62,000 bases of DNA from Octopus vulgaris (lineage: Eukaryota): positions 117,944,001 to 118,006,000 of the forward strand of contig OX597817.1 in the NCBI GenBank assembly GCA_951406725.2, read 5' to 3'. Made by a program: the position numbers and the translations under genes. Below are positions 346 to 62,000 of this stretch, in pieces; positions within the stretch are counted from its first letter, which is position 1; each line of letters begins with the position of its first letter. A model generated the notes under the pieces. The model worked only from the letters and a program-made list of their open reading frames with translations, had not been told where the DNA came from and ran no database searches.

Positions 346-561
346 TATATATATGAGATGATGGTGTCATTGAGACCCAACGGTGTCAGGTAATGCTGAA
401 TAAGTGCTATAGACAGACCATTGTTAAGTTCCAGATTCGGTAATATTGCGAATAAGGGGTTCAACTTTGGGTCTATGTCAGCGTGTGCATATAAGAATTA
501 TTTGCGTAATAAGATAAAAAAACCAAGGCTGTATAGATATTAGAGCATTTATAGATGGAAA

Positions 562-613
562 GCCTTACAGTTGTTTCTAGGATATTTATTAATAACATCC
601 CTTCATCAGAGAC
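562..613 (-). ncRNA. Minimal type I hammerhead ribozyme (family 1)
   Basis: Minus strand reads GTCT-CTGATGA-A-GGGATGTT(ATTAATA)AATATCCT-A-GAAAC-AACT-GTA/AGGC; core intact, one change in the helix III palindrome. Confidence 0.7.
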
Positions 614-756
614 GGTGTGAGAGGAAAGTTAATTCATAGTTAGTTTAGATGTGACACAAAATAGAGTGAGGTGGAGGAAAGAAAATAGATGCAAGATATG
701 TATGGGTATTTTGCATCACATCTAAACTAATTATGACTTAATTTTCCTCTCACACC

Positions 757-808
757 CTCTCCGATGAAGGGATATTATAAAAAAATATCCTAGAAATAGC
801 TGTAAGAC
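757..808 (+). ncRNA. Decayed hammerhead copy (family 1)
   Basis: CTCT-CCGATGA-A-GGGATATT...AATATCCT-A-GAAAT-AGCT-GTA/AGAC; U4>C and C15.2>T substitutions. Confidence 0.6.
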
Positions 809-879
809 CGATCTATAAATGCTCTAATATCTATACAGCCTTGGTTTTTTTATCTTATTACGCAAAAGCTTCATATATT

Positions 880-913
<34 letters not shown>

Positions 914-1395
914 TGCAAATACCATAAGGGCACAGATAGTGTGCCTAAAGCCACCTGGAGACGATGATCTCCTGGTGCTAAAAGCTACAGTAACACCCAT
1001 CCTTTGTAGTTAGCCATATTGAGATGGCTATTATACTTTACATTGTCGAGCGGTTACTGTGTACATCTCGTTCAGAGATTTAATAATGCTTGCAGACAGT
1101 TTTTCGAAATCAGTGACGGAAGTTACTAGAAAAACACATATATTTGCTTACAGGCTTTCCCTTTCATCGTGATCCGGTGATTACCACCCGTTGACAAGAG
1201 GCAGCAACCTCGAAACCGCGGTCCGGTGCGTATCACTTAGGCTTACAAGAAAGGGATGGCCTCCCTTTGCAAATACCATAAGCGCACAGATAATGTGCCT
1301 AAAGCCAGCTGGAGACGATGATCTCCTGGGGCTAAAAGCTACAGTAACACCAACCCTTTGTGGTTAGCCATATTGAGATGGCTATTATACTTTAC
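914..1395 (+). mobile_element. Retrozyme-like element: about 1.36 copies of a 354-bp unit with one hammerhead
   Basis: Near-identical 128-bp direct repeats at 914-1041 and 1268-1395 (period 354) enclose a hammerhead fold at 1185-1228. Confidence 0.7.
1185..1228 (+). ncRNA. Minimal type I hammerhead ribozyme (family 2), core decayed
   Basis: CACCCG-TTGACAA-GAGG(CAGCAA)CCTC-GAAAC-CGCG-GTC/CGGTG; predicted cut after 1223; core differs from CTGACGA at two positions. Confidence 0.7.
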
Positions 1396-4941: not shown

Positions 4942-6065
4942 CAGTTAGTTAGTTAGTTAATTTGGCTCAAAAGCAAATAGCCAGGCCATGTAGGGGGACA
5001 TGGAGCTAAGTACAGGGTGGTGTTCATGCAAAGAGTTCAGGCCACTTGAGGTCCAGGGAGGCTTTGAACAAAACGGTCGTCGGCATCTTCACCATCTCGT
5101 CTGGCAGCTTGTTCCACGGATCCGCAACCCGGACGGAGAAAGCTCCTCTCCTTCGATTGAGATGAAATCGTCGCAGGTAGAGCTTTTCGGAATGACCCCG
5201 CAGCCGACGCTCCGGAGCAGGAGTGAAGAACAGCTCTTTCGAGAGGTTACACTTTCCGCTTATGATGTTGTGGGCGAGAATGAGATCACCACGGCGGCGG
5301 CGTTTTTCAAGAGAACAAAGGTCGAGCGTCCTCAGCCTTTCTTCGTAGGACAAATTTCTGAGACCATGAACCATGCGGGTAGCCAGCCTCTGGACTCTTT
5401 CGTGGGGCTGTATGTATTTGAGGAGATAAGGAGAAGAGGATTGACGCCAATACTCCTATTTGGGTCTCACCAGCGTGACATAGAGTGGCAGGAATATGGC
5501 TGCTGTGAGCATTCCGAATGACCGTCGAATCAAAAACAGAATTCCGCGCGGTTTGTTGGCAGCATGGACGCACTAGGCCGAAGGCGAAAAGGAGGAATCC
5601 ACCAAGATACCCAGGTCCTTTACCTGATCGGTCCTCTCCAGCAGCAGACGACCCGGCTCGAAATCAAGTTGAGTTGCAGGAGTAGAGCCGACAGGCAGAT
5701 GACAGCACTTTGACACGTTCAGACACAGGTCCCAATCGTTAGACCACTTCCAAATTTGGTGGAGGCATCGACGAAGATCCTCTATACTACCGCGAGGAGC
5801 GACCAGTTTGATATCGTCGGCAAATAGAAGGGTGTGTTGCGTGAGGTCGTCGGGCAAGTCATTTATGAAGACTAAGAACAACAAGGGCCCAAGCACTGAA
5901 CTTTGAGGCACGCCACTGCTCGCACTGGAGACGTCGGACCGCGAACCATTAACTTGAACTTCTGGATTCTTCTTGCAATTTTTGCTGTCAGTGTCCATGT
6001 TCTTGGCAGGATTATGACCAATGCAGTGGAAGACCACACGACCTACTCGGAAAGACCAATCCCAA
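4942..6065 (-). mobile_element. 5'-truncated CR1-like LINE, 3' half of RT ORF2, pseudogenised
   Basis: SGVPQSSVLGPLLFLVFINDL, LLFADDIKL, KDLGILVD, LSYEERL..LDL.SLEKRR.RGDL and WNKLP motifs; TAG stop at 5573 and further disruptions; (TAAC)n tail at 4943-4960. Confidence 0.9.
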
Positions 6066-6397
6066 AGTAGATAAAACAAAGTAATAGTGCGTAAATATTA
6101 CTTAAAACCCTCCCTGAGACAGGGAAAGCTAAAGAGGATCCTTGTGACTCGAACCCACCGTATAGAAGTTCTACTATTTGATCGAAACTCTCACTCGAAT
6201 TTCGCTATATATTTTAGAGAGATTTTTTCTCCTGTTCTGTTATGACATGAACAACTCTCGGTGCTAAGAATTGTAACCAAAATGAATAAATACTCATCTA
6301 CGTATAAGTATATATGCATGTATGTATATATGTTTGTATGTATGCATATGTGTGTACATATATAAAACATATATGTGAGCAAATATTCGTGTGTAAA

Positions 6398-6934: not shown

Positions 6935-7536
6935 AGTTGTTTGGTGAAATATAAAAGCTTTAGTCCACTTTGAAATTTTATTCCAAACCAGACGATAGCA
7001 AAGGAGATCTACTGCGAATATCTTAAGCAGCTTCAGTCTTGGTTTCATGACGAAAGATGTTCTACCGTCAGGATAATGATCGGGCACATACAACGAGGAT
7101 GACATTCCAAAGGCTGGAGTGGTTTCAATGGGAAACGATGCTCCACTCACCATATTCACCAGACATTGTCCCATCTGATTATTATTTATACAACAGTCTT
7201 CATAATTATTTGGACGGAAAAAATGTGAATTCTGTAGAAGCGGTGAGAACAGCACTGGAGTATTTTTCGTCACGAACAAGTGAATTTTGGAAGACGAGCA
7301 TTATAAACCACCACATCGATGGAAGAGCATTGTAGAAAATGGAGGGTGTATTTCAAATTAAAATAAATCTTTGTTTATCATAACTATTAAAAATAGAAGG
7401 TGCATTATCTATGGGATAACCACATCGATGGAAGAGCATTGTAGAAAATGGAGGGTATATTTCAAATTAAAATAAATCTTTGTTTATCATAACTATTAAA
7501 AATAGAAGGTGCATTATCTATGGGATAACACAGTAT
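6935..7536 (+). mobile_element. mariner transposase C-terminal fragment with 3' end
   Basis: VVW..VHFEIL, QDNDRAHT and WETMLHSPYSPDIVPSDYYL (YSPDLAPxD motif); TIR-like end ...ATGGGATAACACAG-TA; 109-bp tandem duplication at 7310-7529. Confidence 0.85.
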
Positions 7537-15387: not shown

Positions 15388-15735
15388 ACTCTTTACTCTT
15401 TACTCTTTTACTTGTTTCAGTCATTTGACTGCGGCCATGCTCGAGCACCGCCTTTTGTCGAGCAAATCGACCCCAGAACTTATTATTCGTAAGTCTAGTA
15501 CTTATTCTATCGGTCTCTTTTGCTGAACCGCTAAGTTACATGGATGTAAACACACTAGCATAGGTTTGTCAAGCAAGCGGGACAAACACAGACACACAAA
15601 CATACACCAATATATGTATATAGGTGTATTTTACTATAGCCTCGGGCTGACCAAAGCCTTGTGAGTGGATTTAGTAGACAGAAACTGAAAGAAGACCCTC
15701 GTATATATGTATATATACGTATATATATATGTATA

Positions 15736-15775
<40 letters not shown>

Positions 15776-15796
15776 TGTATATATATATATATATGC

Positions 15797-15871
<75 letters not shown>

Positions 15872-16015
15872 TACATATATATATACGTATATATACATAT
15901 ATACGAGGGTCTTCTTTCAGTTTCCGTCTACTAAATCCACTCACAAGGCTTTGGTCAGCCCAAGGCTATAGCAAAAGACACCTACCCAAGTTGCCACGCA
16001 GTGGGACTGAACTCA
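15388..16015 (-). mobile_element. Composite SINE (family A: tRNA head, CTTGGGCAAG core-like segment, microsatellite, tail) with an internal inverted duplication
   Basis: Matches the copies at 24397, 38047 and 53512; 15623-15745 is the reverse complement of 15862-15982. Confidence 0.85.
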
Positions 16016-16323
16016 GATAATATATGTATTATGCACTGAAGCGCGGGACTATTCAAGATGTAACGGATTACAACGAAACTAGACGAGCTTTTCATTTTAG
16101 GTGCAGCCTGACATACTGACGATAATTACGTCTCCAGCCAGAATTCGAAATCATGACCCAGGTATATCTGTTTCCTTAATTCTACGGCGATTTAGCTGAG
16201 AATATGTTAAATGCTACTCGTTTGCCCGATTTTTGTTGGTCCGTTACATATTTTCATTAAGATTAGTGGTTAAGATGGAGGATTTTACTTCTACTCTTTA
16301 GCAAGTTGGTCCTTCTTGTACCA

Positions 16324-34483: not shown

Positions 34484-34879
34484 GTATGCATGTAACTATA
34501 TCGATATATATGTACCTACTTCCATACTAAATATTGGATATTGGATACAGTTTACTTAGATATTTCGTATCTGTTGACCATTTAAAATTTAACAGTATCT
34601 TCGATACTAGAAATTGTCATAACATATCTATAACTTTATATCTTTTATATCCAGCTTTTTTATAAAATTAATTGCATATTTCGAAATACTTGCGTAATAA
34701 ATTATTGTCTGTGTGTGCATCTATATATATATGTGTGTGTGTGTTTGAGTGGGAGTATGTATATACATGGCTGAGTGTTTGCCTGTCTATATATTTGTGC
34801 CTGCATGTGTACATAGGTTTAGCTATATATGCATTTATGTATATACATATGTACGTACGTATGTATGTGTGTATGTATG

Positions 34880-35205
34880 TCCCAGCTACATGGTTTCGTG
34901 TTTTGTCCCACTGTGGGACACCTTGGGCAATCGTCTTTTGGGGCAAGAACTTGTTCAGTGTATCTGGTAGACGGAAACTGGAAGAATCCCGCCATATATA
35001 TCTATATCTATATATATGTTTGTGTGGGTGTGTGTGTGTTTGTTCCTCACCACCGCTTGACAACCTGTGTTGGTGTGTTTACGTCCCCATGACTTAGCTG
35101 TTCCGTAAAGACACCAATAAAATAAGTACTAGGCTTAAAAATTCCTGCGATCCATTTGTTCGACCAATGCCCTTCTACTGGGCCGCAGTCAAATTACTGA
35201 AACAG
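34880..35205 (+). mobile_element. Composite SINE (family A), degraded head
   Basis: CACCTTGGGCAA, GGTAGACGGAAACTG and ACGTCCCCATGACTTAGC segments shared with 24397. Confidence 0.75.
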
Positions 35206-36376: not shown

Positions 36377-38046
36377 GGTGATTCAGCAGTTCAAACTTCC
36401 ATTTGCTAAGTGCATTATTTATTTGTACGCATTTGTGTTGTATGATGTAAAAACGTATCTATTATGAGATTTTTTTTAAATCTTTGAATGGTTGACGGAT
36501 CTTTATAGACTCTCCTCTACAAGTCAACAGGTATCATAATAAAATCTGTACATTATAATCTCAAGTGCTACACGCAAATTCATGAAAGTTTAGGAAATGC
36601 ATAAGAATACAAGACATTAAGAAAAAAATTGAATATATAATCACGTGAAACTTTTTGACATTTTTAACTGAACTCTGCCTGAATAAAAATGACTTATGGT
36701 TCTGTATATTTGACGCCAATATTTGTTTCGTTTTCATAATCTCTCTCTTACGCTCAGGTTTTTTTCTATCCTTTTACACACATTCTCTCTCACAAATGTG
36801 TCTATACTTTCAAGTATTTATGTTTCTGTCTATTTCCAGATATTTTGGCAGTTCTGCTTAATAGCAAATATATCTAGATATAATGTTGTGTTCGATTAAT
36901 CTTCTTTAATTTTAAAGTAATATAAAACTTACGTATTTTCGAATCAATGTTTACATATATGAATACAGTTTTATATATGTTTGTGTGTGCGTGGTTTCGT
37001 GTGATTTTGCTTGCTTTTAGAATTTTGTTATGTTTATATTTGCTTTCCAAACATATATTTGTACCATCCTCGTTATACCATTATATGTGAGAATTCATAA
37101 AGAGAAATAACTTTAGCTAGGAATTAGACATCATTGACAGTCTAGTGAGATTTAAATGCACACAAAAGTAAATTTGGACAACATTACGTTTTATGGGTGA
37201 CTAGAACTGGAGCCACTGGAACAAATAATCAAATTTTCTTTTATTGATATTGATTTTATTTTAATCTTCCAAACCACAAATATTTACACATAAATACGCT
37301 GGTTGTAACTCCAAGTTCAAAGGAATATTGAATTTTTAGTCCTGTATCATAAAAAAATGTTTAACAGAAAGAAATCATTTAAGTAGATTCACAAATATTT
37401 TAAATCAGTAAATTAAATTTTATTTTGGCGATATATACAATGGTTCGTAGTTTCTATTTAGTCCTGGAGATCTGCATTATTTAGGATTGTTCACATATTT
37501 CCGCGTAGTTCTACATTTATATTACTAAGTTTCAGAATTTCCTCCACTTCTGCAATTTTATCGACGTAAAAGTATTCGACTTCACTTCTAGATTTATCTG
37601 CAATATCTTATATACTTCGCAGGTAATACTAAAATCTAAAAACATTTTTAAAATTTAGTATCCATAAAATTTCCTAGATATGGGGAGCGCAAATATAATC
37701 AGATATGTCGGAATTTGATGTTCTTCCATTGTTGTCAGATGCTCGTAAGCAAATAAATGTAAACCTTAACTGCAACGAATATAATAATGGTAAGAAATTT
37801 AGTATACGTTAGAAGAATAAATATATATTTTTTAAGACATCATATGTCGTGTACTTTGTATCCAAAATATGTTTGTCTTAAGAGAAGTAAATTAATTCAC
37901 ATTCATACGCACAACATATAACGTCTCTAAAGTTTTGTTCAAATGACGCATAATTTCAAATTTTCCATCTCATTTCATTGGTGTAGACAGAAATACGCAT
38001 TTATGCATATACAAGTACACACAAATTATATATATATATATATATA

Positions 38047-38437
38047 GGCGTAGGAGTGGCTGAATACCAACCACATGATTCCGGGTTCAGTCTCACTGCA
38101 TAGCACCTTGGGCAAGTGTATTCTACTATTGCATCGGGCCGACCAAAGCCTTGTGAGTGGATTTGGTAGAGGGAAACTGAAAGAAGCCCGTCATATATAT
38201 ATATATATATATATACGTGTGTGTATATACGTGTGTGTATATGCTTGTGTGTCTGTGTTTGTCCCCCAAACATCGCTTAACAACCGATGGTGGTGTGTTT
38301 ACGTCTCCGTAACTTAGCGGCTCGGCAAAGAGACCGATACAATAGGTACTAGAGTTACAAAGAATAAGTTTTGGGGTATATTTGCTCGACTAAAGGCGGT
38401 GCTCGAGCATGGCCACAGTCAATTGACTGAAACAAAT
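38047..38437 (+). mobile_element. Composite SINE (family A)
   Basis: Collinear with 24397-24803. Confidence 0.85.
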
Positions 38438-47519: not shown

Positions 47520-47970
47520 CTAGATGTTGTACCCACATTGATCATGGAATACGAAATGGTCGACGACTCCCTGCTCCAGAGCTCTTGGATCATTTTTTGC
47601 ATCTGGGATGTCTTCGATCAACGTCATAGTTATCAATATCCGATCTAGAGCTCGTGAAACTGCAGACACGGAAGCAGGTAGCATTCTGGGTAATGCTGCC
47701 TCTAAATCCCTATCCGTCTGTTGAATGGTTGCAAGTGAGTTGGCATCAATAATCACCCGAAGCTTGACTCGCATTTCCTCATAAACCTTAACGCGGTGAG
47801 CACCTCCTCTGGGCAACTTGTAGCTCCTCCCAGACCGTAGTAATGTCGCTACTATGGATCGCGTACAACTCCTTTTAATGCCAAGTGTGTCTGCCAGTTG
47901 CCGGTAATCGGTTTGATGCCCCTCGAAGGTCTCAACCACACTTGCCCTATCGTCTACCGATATATGCATG
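47520..47970 (-). pseudogene. IS630/Tc1-like transposase N-terminal half
   Basis: HTH-like YRQLADTLGIKRSCTRSIV, LPRGG, second HTH SVSAVSRAL, ending at FVFHDQCGYNI (resembles FIDECG, first catalytic D). Confidence 0.7.
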
Positions 47971-48879
47971 TACCTTCCGCGTGACTGCATGATTACAATT
48001 TGGTGTATGAGAAACGGATATAAAACGCAACTAATACCGACCAGTTCGTGGACAGAAGAATGACGTAATTTATTTCTTCCGGGTAGCTATAACAGCATAA
48101 TAATATTATTTAATCTTTCATTTTTAACATTTACTTCTTAGAATGTGAGTAAAACAGAGATGTAAATTTAATGAACTTATTTCCGAACTTGAATGCTCAT
48201 ATGCGAAAAGATGCTTCCTCTCATTGCGAGTAATTTGAAAACTCCCGACGGGCATTTTATATAGAAATGCTAAAGTAAATGCTAAATTCTTTGCTCGCGA
48301 AACTGATGACTAAATTCTTGTACCAATTTCTTTTTCGCGACTTTGAATAACCTGATTACCAAAGTTAGTGACAAACGTACTATCATAACTGCAAAAACCT
48401 AAATTTTTTTAATGTTCCGGTTAAACCTTGATTTCATCACACATTGTCTAAAATTCTTGTGTGTGTGTGTGATCGTATTTTATCTGCGTCTATGTAAATT
48501 CGTGTGCAAACGTAACGAAATGGTTGCGGATATATGTTTGTGTGTATAAGATATAATCTCATAACGTGCATTTCGAAAGTCCTATAGGGTTACAGTAGGA
48601 TTAAGCTTTTTACAGGAAATACATGTGGAAATCCATTAGTGTATGCAGAGTTTACATAAAAATTACAAAACAAGAAAAAGTACATGGGGTCCAGCAGTGC
48701 TGTCAAGGCCATTCATTAGATGATATGCAGGTACGCAGCTTCAACTGGAACATCCATTTAGACAATATTTATGCAACAATATAATATAGCAAACTTAGCA
48801 AGTAATAGCAATTACCAATGCACAGAAACAACTGTGGTAATTACTTATTAATGTCTGATCATTCCATCTTCTCGTTATA

Positions 48880-53511: not shown

Positions 53512-53925
53512 CTCTTTACTCTTTACTCTTTTACTTGTTTCAGTCATTTGGCTGCGTCCATGCTGGAGCACCGCCTTTAGTCGATCAAATCGACCCCGGA
53601 ACTTATTCTTTGTAAGCCCAGTACTTATTCTATCGGTCTCTTTTGCCGAACCGCTAAGTGACGGGGACATAAACACACCAGCATCGGTTGTCAAGCAATG
53701 CTAGGTGGACAAACACAGACACCCCCCCCACACAAATACACACACATATATATATATACATATATACGACAGGCTTCTTCCAGTTTCCGTCTACCAAATC
53801 CACTCACAAGGCATTGGTCGGCCCGGGGCTATAGCACAAGACACTTGCCCAAGGTGGCACGCAGTGGGACCGAACCCGGAACCATGTGGTTGGTTAGCAA
53901 GCTACTAACCACACAGCCACTCCTG
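53512..53925 (-). mobile_element. Full-length composite SINE (family A)
   Basis: Reverse complement of 24397-24803. Confidence 0.9.
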
Positions 53926-55139
53926 TACGTATATATACGTACGCACATTGATAAATACGTACACACATATCTACACACGTACACATTTATACTTCCGATA
54001 TTTTACCACAACACAAAAGTTAACGAGTAAAATATCTTTAAGGAATTACGCACACGCTGCTATCGCTGCTTGTCAACATATGCAACACTTAAGAAGACAT
54101 CGGAAATGAAATTGTGTGTTTCCCAGCAATCAGCTTCTGTGTCGCTCATCTGCAATTTTCTGAAGCAAAGAAACACACCAACAAAAGAACACTTCCAAGA
54201 TGTCAGCATTATCTCATCTTGATTCCTTTAGATGTAAGCGATAGTAACGTGTTATTAAACACACATACTTAAAATATACGCTTCGTGTATTTTCCCGTGA
54301 ATTCAATACCCTGGTGGAGTATATACACTCTCAATGCACCCGAGTCATGGACAGGCGAGGTAATTCGCCTTCAACCCCATAGGAAAGGGATGAACATCCA
54401 TGTTTTTGTCATTTTTGTGGCTTAGCAACATCACGTATCCCCCAGGAAAGAAAGCAAGACACCTAGGCAGTCCACGACTTACAGGCTCGTGGCTTGTAAA
54501 ACCATGTTCTGGCATGCCGGAAATTGCGTGTTTTGCGATATTATCATCCTAGAGCTGCTTTTATTTCATAGGTAACAAAATAATTCTCAAGATTTGAATC
54601 TGACTGAGCAGAGATGTGAAGACCATGTCAATGCAATCTTACCAAAACAACAAGTATTTTATAAATGTTTTGACGTCAGGTGGTACTTAACACATATTCT
54701 TGAGGGTGACTAAAGCAAGAAAAAATAATGAAGAAGATAGAGACGTATCAATGGCTTCCTGTCGGCTTAACAGAGATAAATGAAATGTTACAATTAAGAT
54801 ATACATAATCTTCCCCTACATTCAGCTGCTCCGGCATTGTTGTCTGCAAAACATTGAAATATCGGTTACATATATAAAAAAATCAACGACACGGAAATGT
54901 ACTTCGGTTTCAAAACACATTAATGATAATTATCCCTTTTGAAATATTTTCTTCAGAGATCTAAACAGAAATCAGTTAATTGAATATGCACATACACTCA
55001 TTTTCTCGGGCTTATACAGCTGGACGTAATTGATGATACTCTCATAATCTTTGTGTAATAAAGAGAAATACATGAAGCAATAAATATATAAATATTTTGC
55101 ATTCTCTCTCAAATGCTTCGTTCAGAGTTTCCACATAAC

Positions 55140-57175: not shown

Positions 57176-62000
<4,825 letters not shown>

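What the first reader, a model, noticed from the sequence alone, without database searches (positions are those of the whole stretch)
914..1395. Retrozyme-like 354-bp unit with one hammerhead: candidate circular-RNA replicon
Seen: 128-bp direct repeats exactly 354 bp apart, no ORF, and a well-formed hammerhead between them (GAGG/CCTC stem II, GAAACCGCGGTC, CACCG/CGGTG-type stem I). The left end abuts a TA tract. The core reads TTGACAA instead of CTGACGA; the G>A change is at a CpG. Established: metazoan non-LTR retrozymes are tandem monomers of a few hundred bp with one hammerhead each and give circular RNAs. Inference: a 1.36-mer is what reverse transcription past the start of a 354-nt circle would leave. 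I do not know of this family being described in cephalopods but cannot search.
Basis: partly seen in the sequence, partly recalled or inferred. Interest (0 to 1): 0.8.

Follow-up and report, generated by a model that had tools for sequence, protein, structure and literature searches.

The report
Fossil hammerhead retrozyme copy, 1.36 units
This is a single, old, non-coding copy of a known kind of animal mobile element (a ~354-bp 'retrozyme' that carries a self-cutting hammerhead RNA motif); the motif is real and has a rare but documented paired change in its core, but this locus has only one motif and so cannot make RNA circles itself.

Summary
Positions 914-1041 and 1268-1395 are 128-bp direct repeats (121/128 identical, no indels) exactly 354 bp apart. 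There is no open frame, and a (TA)n tract lies on the left.

At 1176-1236 (+) there is a complete type I hammerhead architecture. A descriptor scan finds it as the only hit in 62 kb, and none in 300 window shuffles or 20,000 element shuffles. Rfam models do not detect it, even at E<=10.

- The "damaged" core TTGACAA is the U3-A8 covariant of the C3-G8 pair. It is documented in nature and active in vitro. All six CpGs in the motif are intact, so simple decay is unlikely.
- Helix III (ACCGCGGT) is a perfect palindrome, the mark of hammerheads that cut as dimers in tandem transcripts.

The locus has one hammerhead in 1.36 units, so it is a relic insertion, not a replicon. The 354-nt unit folds much better than shuffles (z -3.9 to -4.8).

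It best fits a dispersed monomer-type copy of a metazoan non-LTR retrozyme, the non-autonomous Penelope-like-element class. No host genome was available, so copy number, permuted ends, circles and the host (cephalopod unverified) are untested. It is a new member of a known kind, of modest interest.

The parts
874..913 (.). (TA)n-rich microsatellite abutting the left end of the insert; probable target sequence
   Evidence: Read directly. Penelope-like elements show an insertion bias for microsatellites, (TA)n for Naiads (PMC8557442). No flanking target-site duplication was found.
914..1041 (+). Upstream partial unit: the 3'-terminal 128 bp of the unit, a pseudo-LTR-like 5'-truncated copy
   Evidence: 121/128 identical to 1268-1395, offset 354, no gaps.
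1042..1395 (+). One full 354-bp unit (non-coding, 45% GC), ending at the shared 3' boundary ...CTTTAC
   Evidence: Period 354. At least 3 stops in every frame. The circular fold is -103 to -109 kcal/mol against -82 +/- 5 for shuffles, z -3.9 to -4.8.
1268..1395 (+). Second copy of the 128-bp repeat (3' end of the full unit)
   Evidence: There are 7 differences (3 transitions, 4 transversions); JC distance 0.057.
1153..1261 (+). Long imperfect hairpin that carries the hammerhead at its tip (helix I extended by CCCTTTC/GAAAGGG and flanking pairs)
   Evidence: Minimum-free-energy circular fold of both versions of the unit.
1176..1236 (+). Type I hammerhead ribozyme motif
   Evidence: Only descriptor hit in the 62-kb window; 0 hits in shuffles. 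Hand-drawn structure checked pair by pair. Not detected by Rfam models.
1191..1197 (+). Catalytic core box TTGACAA: U3 and A8 replace C3 and G8 (a covarying Watson-Crick pair); U4 G5 A6 A9 are canonical
   Evidence: Sequence. The U3-A8 covariation is natural and active in vitro (PMC3088659) and gave about 1,300 hits in Schistosoma with a U3-A8 min-HHR descriptor derived from a variant found via the PLE Cercyon (PMC4209133).
1198..1211 (+). Helix II (GAGG/CCTC, G10.1-C11.1 closing pair) with 6-nt loop CAGCAA
1212..1223 (+). GAAA box, then helix III/loop ACCGCGGT (a perfect 8-nt palindrome, 1215-1222) and C17; predicted cleavage falls between 1223 and 1224
   Evidence: Palindrome verified. Cofolding two copies forms an 8-bp intermolecular helix III: -43.5 kcal/mol against 2 x -17.0. 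A short palindromic helix III is the hallmark of dimer-acting metazoan type I hammerheads (PMC4209133).

Best explanation
The 482-bp segment 914-1395 is a single, old, dead-on-arrival insertion of a short non-autonomous retroelement of the metazoan non-LTR retrozyme type, the class now regarded as non-autonomous derivatives of Penelope-like elements. It consists of one full 354-bp unit preceded by the last 128 bp of another.

Inferred life cycle of the parent family:
1. Tandem master copies are transcribed.
2. Hammerheads of neighbouring units pair through their palindromic helix III (ACCGCGGU) to form the active dimeric ribozyme.
3. Each hammerhead cuts after GUC, at 1223|1224 in this copy.
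4. The 354-nt monomer, with 5'-OH and 2',3'-cyclic phosphate ends, is closed into a highly base-paired circle by the host tRNA ligase RtcB.
5. A Penelope-like reverse transcriptase/endonuclease copies a circle or an uncleaved multimer into a nicked (TA)n site. It runs for 1.36 unit lengths and leaves a pseudo-LTR-like partial tandem.

The core of this family's hammerhead probably carried the compensated U3-A8 pair instead of C3-G8, rather than two random inactivating hits.

Shown here: the anatomy, its non-randomness, the dimer-compatible palindrome and the strong self-pairing. Inferred: all steps of the life cycle, the mobilising enzyme and the status of the family. The locus itself has one hammerhead and cannot release a unit-length RNA.
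For: - Exact 354-bp period, 128-bp overlap and sharp boundaries.
- A complete type I hammerhead is the only descriptor hit in 62 kb. There were 0 hits in 300 window shuffles and 0 in 20,000 element shuffles, and 6 in 400 even with any core of up to 2 mismatches.
- The helix sizes (about 6 bp, 4 bp, 2 bp plus a palindromic tetraloop) match the published description of canonical metazoan type I hammerheads (PMC4209133).
- Cofolding gives an 8-bp intermolecular helix III.
- The two core differences fall on exactly the two positions that pair with each other. U3-A8 is a documented natural and active covariant. The other core positions and all 6 CpGs of the motif are intact.
- Unit length 354 bp, GC 44%, no ORF, no LTR/PBS/TSD. 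Mussel retrozymes are 350-390 bp and low in GC.
- The circular fold has z -3.9 to -4.8, matching 'highly self-paired circRNAs'.
- The insert ends lie 44 and 172 nt from the cleavage site, so the template was not a cleaved linear monomer (sequence).
- Partial tandems and microsatellite targets are Penelope-like hallmarks.
- Retrozymes group with Penelope pLTRs, and dispersed monomer copies are common.
- RtcB circularises mussel and axolotl monomers in vitro.
Against: - Rfam hammerhead covariance models give no match, even at E<=10 on 81 nt.
- The isolated 76-nt region does not fold better than shuffles (z -0.34).
- No second copy exists in the window or in any accessible collection, so multi-copy family status is unproven.
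- There is no target-site duplication and no recognisable Penelope 'tail'.
- The U3-A8 descriptor was added after seeing the sequence.
- Cleavage by this particular U3-A8 motif is untested.
- The host species, and therefore the presence of Penelope-like partners, is not established.
Confidence: 0.7

Rival explanations
1. The hammerhead was canonical (CTGACGA) when inserted, and the locus has since decayed. T3 and A8 are two independent neutral transitions, one of them at a CpG, and the motif is simply dead.
For: The insert is old: the two repeat copies differ at 7 of 128 positions, JC 0.057. G8>A would be a CpG transition, since C7 precedes it. Rfam does not recognise the motif.
Against: At about 2.8% divergence per copy, roughly 0.4 substitutions are expected in the ~13 conserved core positions. 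That both hits are transitions landing on the one pair of core positions that base-pair with each other, restoring a Watson-Crick pair, has a probability of order 1e-3 to 1e-4 (my estimate). All 6 CpGs in the hammerhead are intact, CpG o/e 1.13. The window shows only weak CpG depletion, 0.87. U3-A8 is known in nature.
Confidence: 0.15
2. The hammerhead-like motif is a chance resemblance inside a local segmental duplication that has nothing to do with retroelements.
For: Single copy in the window. No Rfam hit. No target-site duplication.
Against: The descriptor gave 0 hits in 300 shuffled windows and 0 in 20,000 shuffled elements. With a lenient core the expectation is 0.015 per window, or about 1e-4 for the 482 bp. 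Features not in the descriptor also fit: the 8-nt palindromic helix III, a 6-nt loop 2, a distal 5-bp helix I, and a strongly structured 354-nt unit. A 1.36-unit arrangement is not what a simple tandem duplication produces.
Confidence: 0.05
3. It is a miniature LTR-type element (a TRIM or a plant-style LTR retrozyme): 128-bp LTRs flanking a 226-bp internal region.
For: Two direct repeats flank an internal segment. A purine run AAGAAAGGGA lies 10 nt upstream of the 3' repeat.
Against: The repeats end TG...AC, not TG...CA. There is no TGG-type primer-binding site after the 5' repeat and no 4-6-bp target-site duplication. The hammerhead is type I and lies in the internal part, not in the repeats as in plant retrozymes (PMC7229834). 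The purine run is the 3' strand of the extended helix I stem.
Confidence: 0.04
4. This locus is itself an active source of a 354-nt circular RNA.
For: The unit is complete, strongly structured, and carries a possibly competent hammerhead.
Against: Only one cleavage site is present in 1.36 units. Two are needed to release a monomer. The 2-bp helix III with a palindromic loop implies a need for a second hammerhead in the same transcript.
Confidence: 0.02

Closest known systems
Metazoan non-LTR retrozymes (Cervera & de la Pena 2020, PMC7229834), especially the 350-390-bp Mytilus galloprovincialis family
   Same: Unit size (354 bp), low GC (44%) and no coding capacity. It has one type I hammerhead per unit with a short helix III, gives a highly self-paired RNA, and lacks LTR, PBS and PPT.
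   Different: Only 1.36 units and one hammerhead at this locus, where the family is defined on tandem dimers to multimers. The core is U3-A8 instead of C3-G8. Sequence relatedness to any described family, copy number and circRNA expression could not be tested.
Hammerhead-bearing pseudo-LTRs of Penelope-like elements and their non-autonomous derivatives (PMC4209133; PMC8557442; bioRxiv 10.64898/2026.07.22.740005)
   Same: Partial-tandem (pLTR-like) insertion architecture with a microsatellite at the insertion site. The helix III is palindromic. The U3-A8 core variant was first seen via the Schistosoma PLE Cercyon.
   Different: No RT/GIY-YIG ORF, and a 354-bp period too short to encode one. The hammerhead here has the canonical layout (4-bp helix II, about 6-bp helix I with an internal loop), not the minimal PLE form. 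No 30-40-bp tail was recognised.
Newt/salamander satellite 2 and Schistosoma Sm-alpha hammerhead repeats (classical type I, dimer-acting)
   Same: Type I topology and a 2-bp helix III capped by a palindromic loop, which implies cleavage as a dimer in multimeric transcripts. The repeat unit is about 330-350 bp.
   Different: Those occur as long tandem arrays or SINE-like families with a C3-G8 core. This is a solitary copy with U3-A8.
Plant LTR retrozymes (PMC4918200)
   Same: A non-autonomous retroelement associated with a hammerhead and circular RNA intermediates.
   Different: The plant elements have type III hammerheads inside real LTRs of about 350 bp, plus PBS, PPT, 4-bp TSDs and GC >55%. 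None of these is present here.

Membership tests
Hammerhead ribozyme, type I | Three helices around the core in type I topology (helix I open; helices II and III closed by loops) | tested here: met
   Helix I 1177-1190/1224-1236, helix II 1198-1201/1208-1211, helix III 1215-1216/1221-1222. All listed pairs are standard.
Hammerhead ribozyme, type I | Conserved core nucleotides U4 G5 A6 A9, G12 A13 A14, A15.1-U16.1, H17, G10.1-C11.1 | tested here: met
   All present: T1192 G1193 A1194 A1197, GAAA 1212-1215, A1215-T1222, C1223, G1198-C1211.
Hammerhead ribozyme, type I | Positions 3 and 8 form a Watson-Crick pair (C-G in nearly all members; U-A is a documented covariant) | tested here: met
   T1191 and A1196+1 (A1197 is A9; A8 = 1196? 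see note): the core TTGACAA reads U3 U4 G5 A6 C7 A8 A9, so positions 3 and 8 are U and A. This is not the canonical C-G but the covariant reported as natural and active (PMC3088659; PMC4209133).
Hammerhead ribozyme, type I | Scores at or above the gathering threshold of an Rfam hammerhead covariance model | tested here: not met
   No hammerhead family is listed at gathering score, at E<=10 on 601 nt, or at E<=10 on 81 nt.
Hammerhead ribozyme, type I | Site-specific self-cleavage | not testable with these tools
   Needs in vitro transcription of monomeric and dimeric constructs.
Metazoan non-LTR retrozyme | Type I hammerhead inside a non-coding unit of about 150-450 bp with low GC | tested here: met
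   354 bp, 44-45% GC, at least 3 stops in every frame; definition from PMC7229834.
Metazoan non-LTR retrozyme | Head-to-tail tandem of at least 2 units, so that two hammerheads flank a monomer | tested here: not met
   1.36 units and one hammerhead at this locus. Monomer-type derivative copies are recognised for the family, so this bears on the locus, not necessarily on the family.
Metazoan non-LTR retrozyme | Absence of LTR termini, PBS, PPT and short TSDs | tested here: met
   TG...AC ends, no TGG primer-binding site, no TSD.
Metazoan non-LTR retrozyme | Monomer RNA is highly self-paired | tested here: met
   Circular MFE -103 to -109 kcal/mol; z -3.9 and -4.8; 0 of 200 shuffles as stable.
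Metazoan non-LTR retrozyme | Multi-copy family in the host genome, with dimers or multimers | not testable with these tools
   No eukaryotic genome collection is available. There was nothing in the window, the protein database, or the metagenome/viral/prokaryote scans, which gave chance hits only.
Metazoan non-LTR retrozyme | Expression as linear and circular RNA of unit length | not testable with these tools
   Needs host RNA-seq, Northern blot or RNase R.
Penelope-like element (autonomous) | ORF with a telomerase-like RT and a GIY-YIG endonuclease | tested here: not met
   No ORF longer than 58 aa in or next to the element. The nearest RT fragment (5573-6079, minus strand, RVT_1) is 4 kb away and LINE-like.
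Penelope-like element (integration signature) | Partial tandem (pseudo-LTR) with a 5'-truncated upstream copy; microsatellite target | tested here: met
   A 128-bp partial copy lies upstream of a full unit, and (TA)n lies at the left junction; features as described in PMC8557442. The tail extension was not identifiable.
LTR retrozyme / TRIM | TG...CA LTRs, PBS, PPT adjacent to the 3' LTR, 4-6-bp TSD, hammerhead (type III) within the LTRs | tested here: not met
   The hammerhead is type I and lies outside the repeats.

The most novel reading that the evidence does not exclude
The copy is a fossil of a still-undescribed retrozyme family of its host (possibly a cephalopod). The family's canonical-format type I hammerhead would use the U3-A8 pair as its normal, active core and produce about 354-nt circular RNAs from tandem master loci. 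U3-A8 would then be a selected catalytic variant in a circRNA-forming retrozyme, not only in minimal Penelope hammerheads, and this element class would be extended to a new animal group.
Probability: 0.25. Interest if true: 0.45.

Novelty: new member of a known kind. Interest (0 to 1): 0.3.

Why it matters
Retrozymes are the one known ribozyme-driven route to circular RNA in animals, and they are candidate non-autonomous partners of Penelope-like elements. A family with a U3-A8 core would have two uses. It would be a natural experiment on the one Watson-Crick pair inside the hammerhead active site. It would also show that standard tools (Rfam models, CUGANGA descriptors) undercount such elements: this motif is invisible to Rfam although its architecture is complete. 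As a single decayed copy, the locus matters mainly as a pointer for a genome-wide search in the host. It is not a new mechanism.

Tried and rejected
1. Rfam 15 on the whole window (gathering score) and on 601-nt and 81-nt sub-regions at E<=10 gave no hammerhead or other ribozyme. The only hits were spurious miRNA-like matches on the TA tract.
2. Folding the isolated 76-nt hammerhead region gave z -0.34, which is uninformative.
3. Search for other copies:
   - blastn of the element against the window found only itself.
   - The 58-aa ORF 1191-1367 against the 5.8-billion-protein database found no candidate.
   - A pattern scan of metagenome contigs gave 4 hits, all in 63-67% GC contigs with no hammerhead core upstream, i.e. 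chance.
   - Two viral-contig scans gave 0 hits.
   - The prokaryote genome scan gave 4 hits that do not extend beyond the 21-25-nt seed.
4. Host identification:
   - An exact look-up of a window ORF found nothing.
   - The Helitron ORF's best homologues are only 55-58% identical. They are spread over rotifers, gastropods, flatworms, arthropods and Octopus bimaculoides, so the cephalopod origin is unverified.
5. The LTR/TRIM reading is rejected: no TG...CA ends, PBS or TSD.
6. The coding reading is rejected: at least 3 stops in each frame on the circle.
7. A relation to the adjacent 390-bp palindromic element 489-878 (a possible inverted truncated copy, as at Penelope insertions) is rejected: there is no sequence similarity.
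8. Two papers on 3-8 pair mutants (PMC1986816, PMC2271363) are not held. Activity of the covariant is cited from PMC3088659 instead.

Full report
**Observation**

The repeat finder and a direct comparison show two 128-nt copies, 914-1041 and 1268-1395. They are 121/128 identical, have no gaps, and start exactly 354 bp apart. Similarity ends abruptly on both sides. The left end abuts a (TA)n tract at about 874-913. The right end runs into TA/TC/GA-type low-complexity sequence. No ORF longer than 58 aa overlaps the element. Read as a circle, each of the six frames of the 354-nt unit has at least 3 stops. The element has 44% GC against 35% for the window. No other copy of it occurs in the 62 kb.

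**The hammerhead**

On the + strand at 1176-1236 the sequence draws as a type I hammerhead:
- Helix I, 1177-1190 with 1224-1236: 3 bp next to the core, a bulged C, 2 bp, a 3x3 internal loop, then 5 bp.
- Core box TTGACAA, 1191-1197.
- Helix II, GAGG/CCTC, closed by the G10.1-C11.1 pair, with the 6-nt loop CAGCAA.
- GAAA, 1212-1215.
- Helix III: two pairs (A-U, C-G) around CGCG.
- Cleavage triplet GUC, ending at 1223.

These helix sizes match the published description of canonical metazoan type I hammerheads: helix I about 6 bp, helix II 4 bp, and helix III 1-2 bp capped by a 2-4-nt palindromic loop (PMC4209133).

I wrote a descriptor for this architecture, accepting CTGANGA or TTGANAA as the core. 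It hits only position 1191 in the whole window on both strands. It hits nothing in 300 dinucleotide-preserving shuffles of the window or 20,000 shuffles of the element. The TTGANAA alternative was added after seeing the sequence, so I repeated the test allowing any core with up to two mismatches. That gave 6 hits in 400 shuffled windows, an expectation of 0.015 per window or about 1e-4 for 482 bp, against the one real hit. A looser 'minimal hammerhead' scan also finds only this site. The motif is therefore not a chance resemblance.

Against this, Rfam 15 reports no hammerhead family at gathering score, at E<=10 on 601 nt, or at E<=10 on 81 nt. The isolated 76-nt region also folds no better than shuffles. 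By the standard automated criterion the motif is invisible.

**Two points that change the reading**

First, the core. The two changed positions are 3 and 8, and these are the two core nucleotides that form a Watson-Crick pair in the active structure. C3-G8 to U3-A8 keeps the pair.
- Cervera and de la Pena found the same covariation via the Schistosoma Penelope-like element Cercyon. A U3-A8 descriptor retrieved about 1,300 hits (PMC4209133).
- The two repeat copies differ by JC 0.057, or about 2.8% per copy. At that divergence only about 0.4 substitutions are expected in the ~13 conserved positions. Two transitions landing on just this pair has a probability of order 1e-3 to 1e-4 (my estimate).
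- The CpG argument is weak. All six CpGs of the motif are intact (o/e 1.13), and the window is hardly CpG-depleted (0.87).

I therefore think the U3-A8 core was inherited from the source element. This is an inference that only other copies can settle.

Second, helix III. ACCGCGGT (1215-1222) is a perfect 8-nt palindrome. Cofolding two copies of the 61-nt motif gives an intermolecular 8-bp helix III, with both helices II kept. The energy is -43.5 kcal/mol against 2 x -17.0 for the monomers. This is the known design of hammerheads that are poor as monomers and cut as dimers within multimeric transcripts.

**What the element is**

The 354-bp period is itself informative. In a partial tandem the period equals the unit length, so the template unit was 354 nt. 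That is far too short to encode a reverse transcriptase.

The unit RNA is strongly structured. As a circle its minimum free energy is -103 to -109 kcal/mol against -82 +/- 5 for shuffles (z -3.9 and -4.8 for the two versions, 0 of 200 shuffles as stable). The minus strand gives z -2.4 to -3.6. The hammerhead sits at the tip of a long imperfect hairpin, 1153-1261.

The following all fit the non-LTR retrozymes described by Cervera and de la Pena, which include a 350-390-bp family in the mussel (PMC7229834):
- unit size and low GC
- lack of coding capacity
- lack of LTR termini (TG...AC), primer-binding site and target-site duplication
- a type I hammerhead
- a highly self-paired monomer RNA

The arrangement is a full unit preceded by a 5'-truncated copy, next to a microsatellite. 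That is the pseudo-LTR signature of Penelope-like integration (PMC8557442). [quoted passage not shown] It also notes dispersed monomer-type copies that probably cannot transpose (10.64898/2026.07.22.740005).

Neither end of the insert coincides with the cleavage site. The ends lie 44 and 172 nt downstream of it. The template was therefore a circle or an uncleaved multimer, not a cleaved linear monomer.

**What it is not**

This locus has one hammerhead in 1.36 units. Releasing a monomer needs two cleavage sites, and this ribozyme design needs a partner copy. The locus is therefore a relic, not a replicon. It is not an LTR/TRIM element, not coding, and not related to the 390-bp palindromic element just upstream.

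**Limits**

None of the accessible collections contains the host genome. The following searches gave nothing or only chance matches: a protein search with the longest ORF of the unit, one metagenome scan, two viral scans and one prokaryote-genome scan. Copy number, end structure, core composition across copies and expression are all untested.

The host is also unverified. The window's Helitron ORF has homologues of only 55-58% identity, scattered over many invertebrate phyla; one of them is Octopus bimaculoides. If the host is an octopus, partners are plausible, since O. vulgaris has 30 recently active Penelope families (PMC13282606). Hammerhead_1 motifs have already been counted in a cephalopod genome: 235 in the giant squid (PMC6962438).

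**Verdict**

The segment is best read as a fossil, monomer-type insertion of a Penelope-associated non-LTR retrozyme, carrying a dimer-type type I hammerhead with the compensated U3-A8 core (confidence about 0.7). It is a new member of a known kind. Interest is modest (0.3), and lies mainly in the U3-A8 core and in the fact that standard models miss it.

Noticed in passing
window 489-878: A 390-bp almost perfectly palindromic (foldback/MITE-like) element lies directly upstream of the TA tract. Outer arms 489-556/811-878 are 94% complementary, inner arms 564-663/707-806 are 88%, and it is 81% self-complementary over its full length. It is single-copy in the window and has no similarity to the retrozyme unit.
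   Followed up: partly
window 57397-61864 (minus strand): A nearly intact Helitron Rep/helicase gene is split into ORFs of 1186 aa and 292 aa (Pfam Helitron_like_N, PIF1 and Pif1_2B in the homologues). The best database relatives are only 55-58% identical and come from many invertebrate phyla, including Octopus bimaculoides.
   Followed up: partly
window 5024-6079 (minus strand): A fragment of a LINE-type reverse transcriptase (Pfam RVT_1, E 3e-12) with a downstream C-terminal ORF. It is not Penelope-like by eye, and it lies 4 kb from the finding on the other strand.
   Followed up: partly
window 15555-16020, 34668-35097, 38001-38273, 53698-54030: A short interspersed repeat recurs in ORF translations (motif ...SSFRLP.PLTR.WSA.GYS..HLPK..RSGTE...). 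It is embedded in TA/CA microsatellites. At 15555-16020 it occurs as an inverted pair. It is probably a SINE-like family of the host.
   Followed up: no
window 7057-7335 (+) and 47520-47990 (-): By eye these ORFs resemble the C-terminal DDE part of a mariner-type transposase and the N-terminal helix-turn-helix part of a Tc1/mariner-type transposase. Pfam gave no hit at E<=0.01, so this is unconfirmed.
   Followed up: partly
whole window: The sequence is very rich in (TA)n, (GA)n, (CA)n and (TATC)n microsatellites, with 35% GC and CpG o/e 0.87. No host gene is evident, so the region looks like TE-rich intergenic sequence.
   Followed up: no
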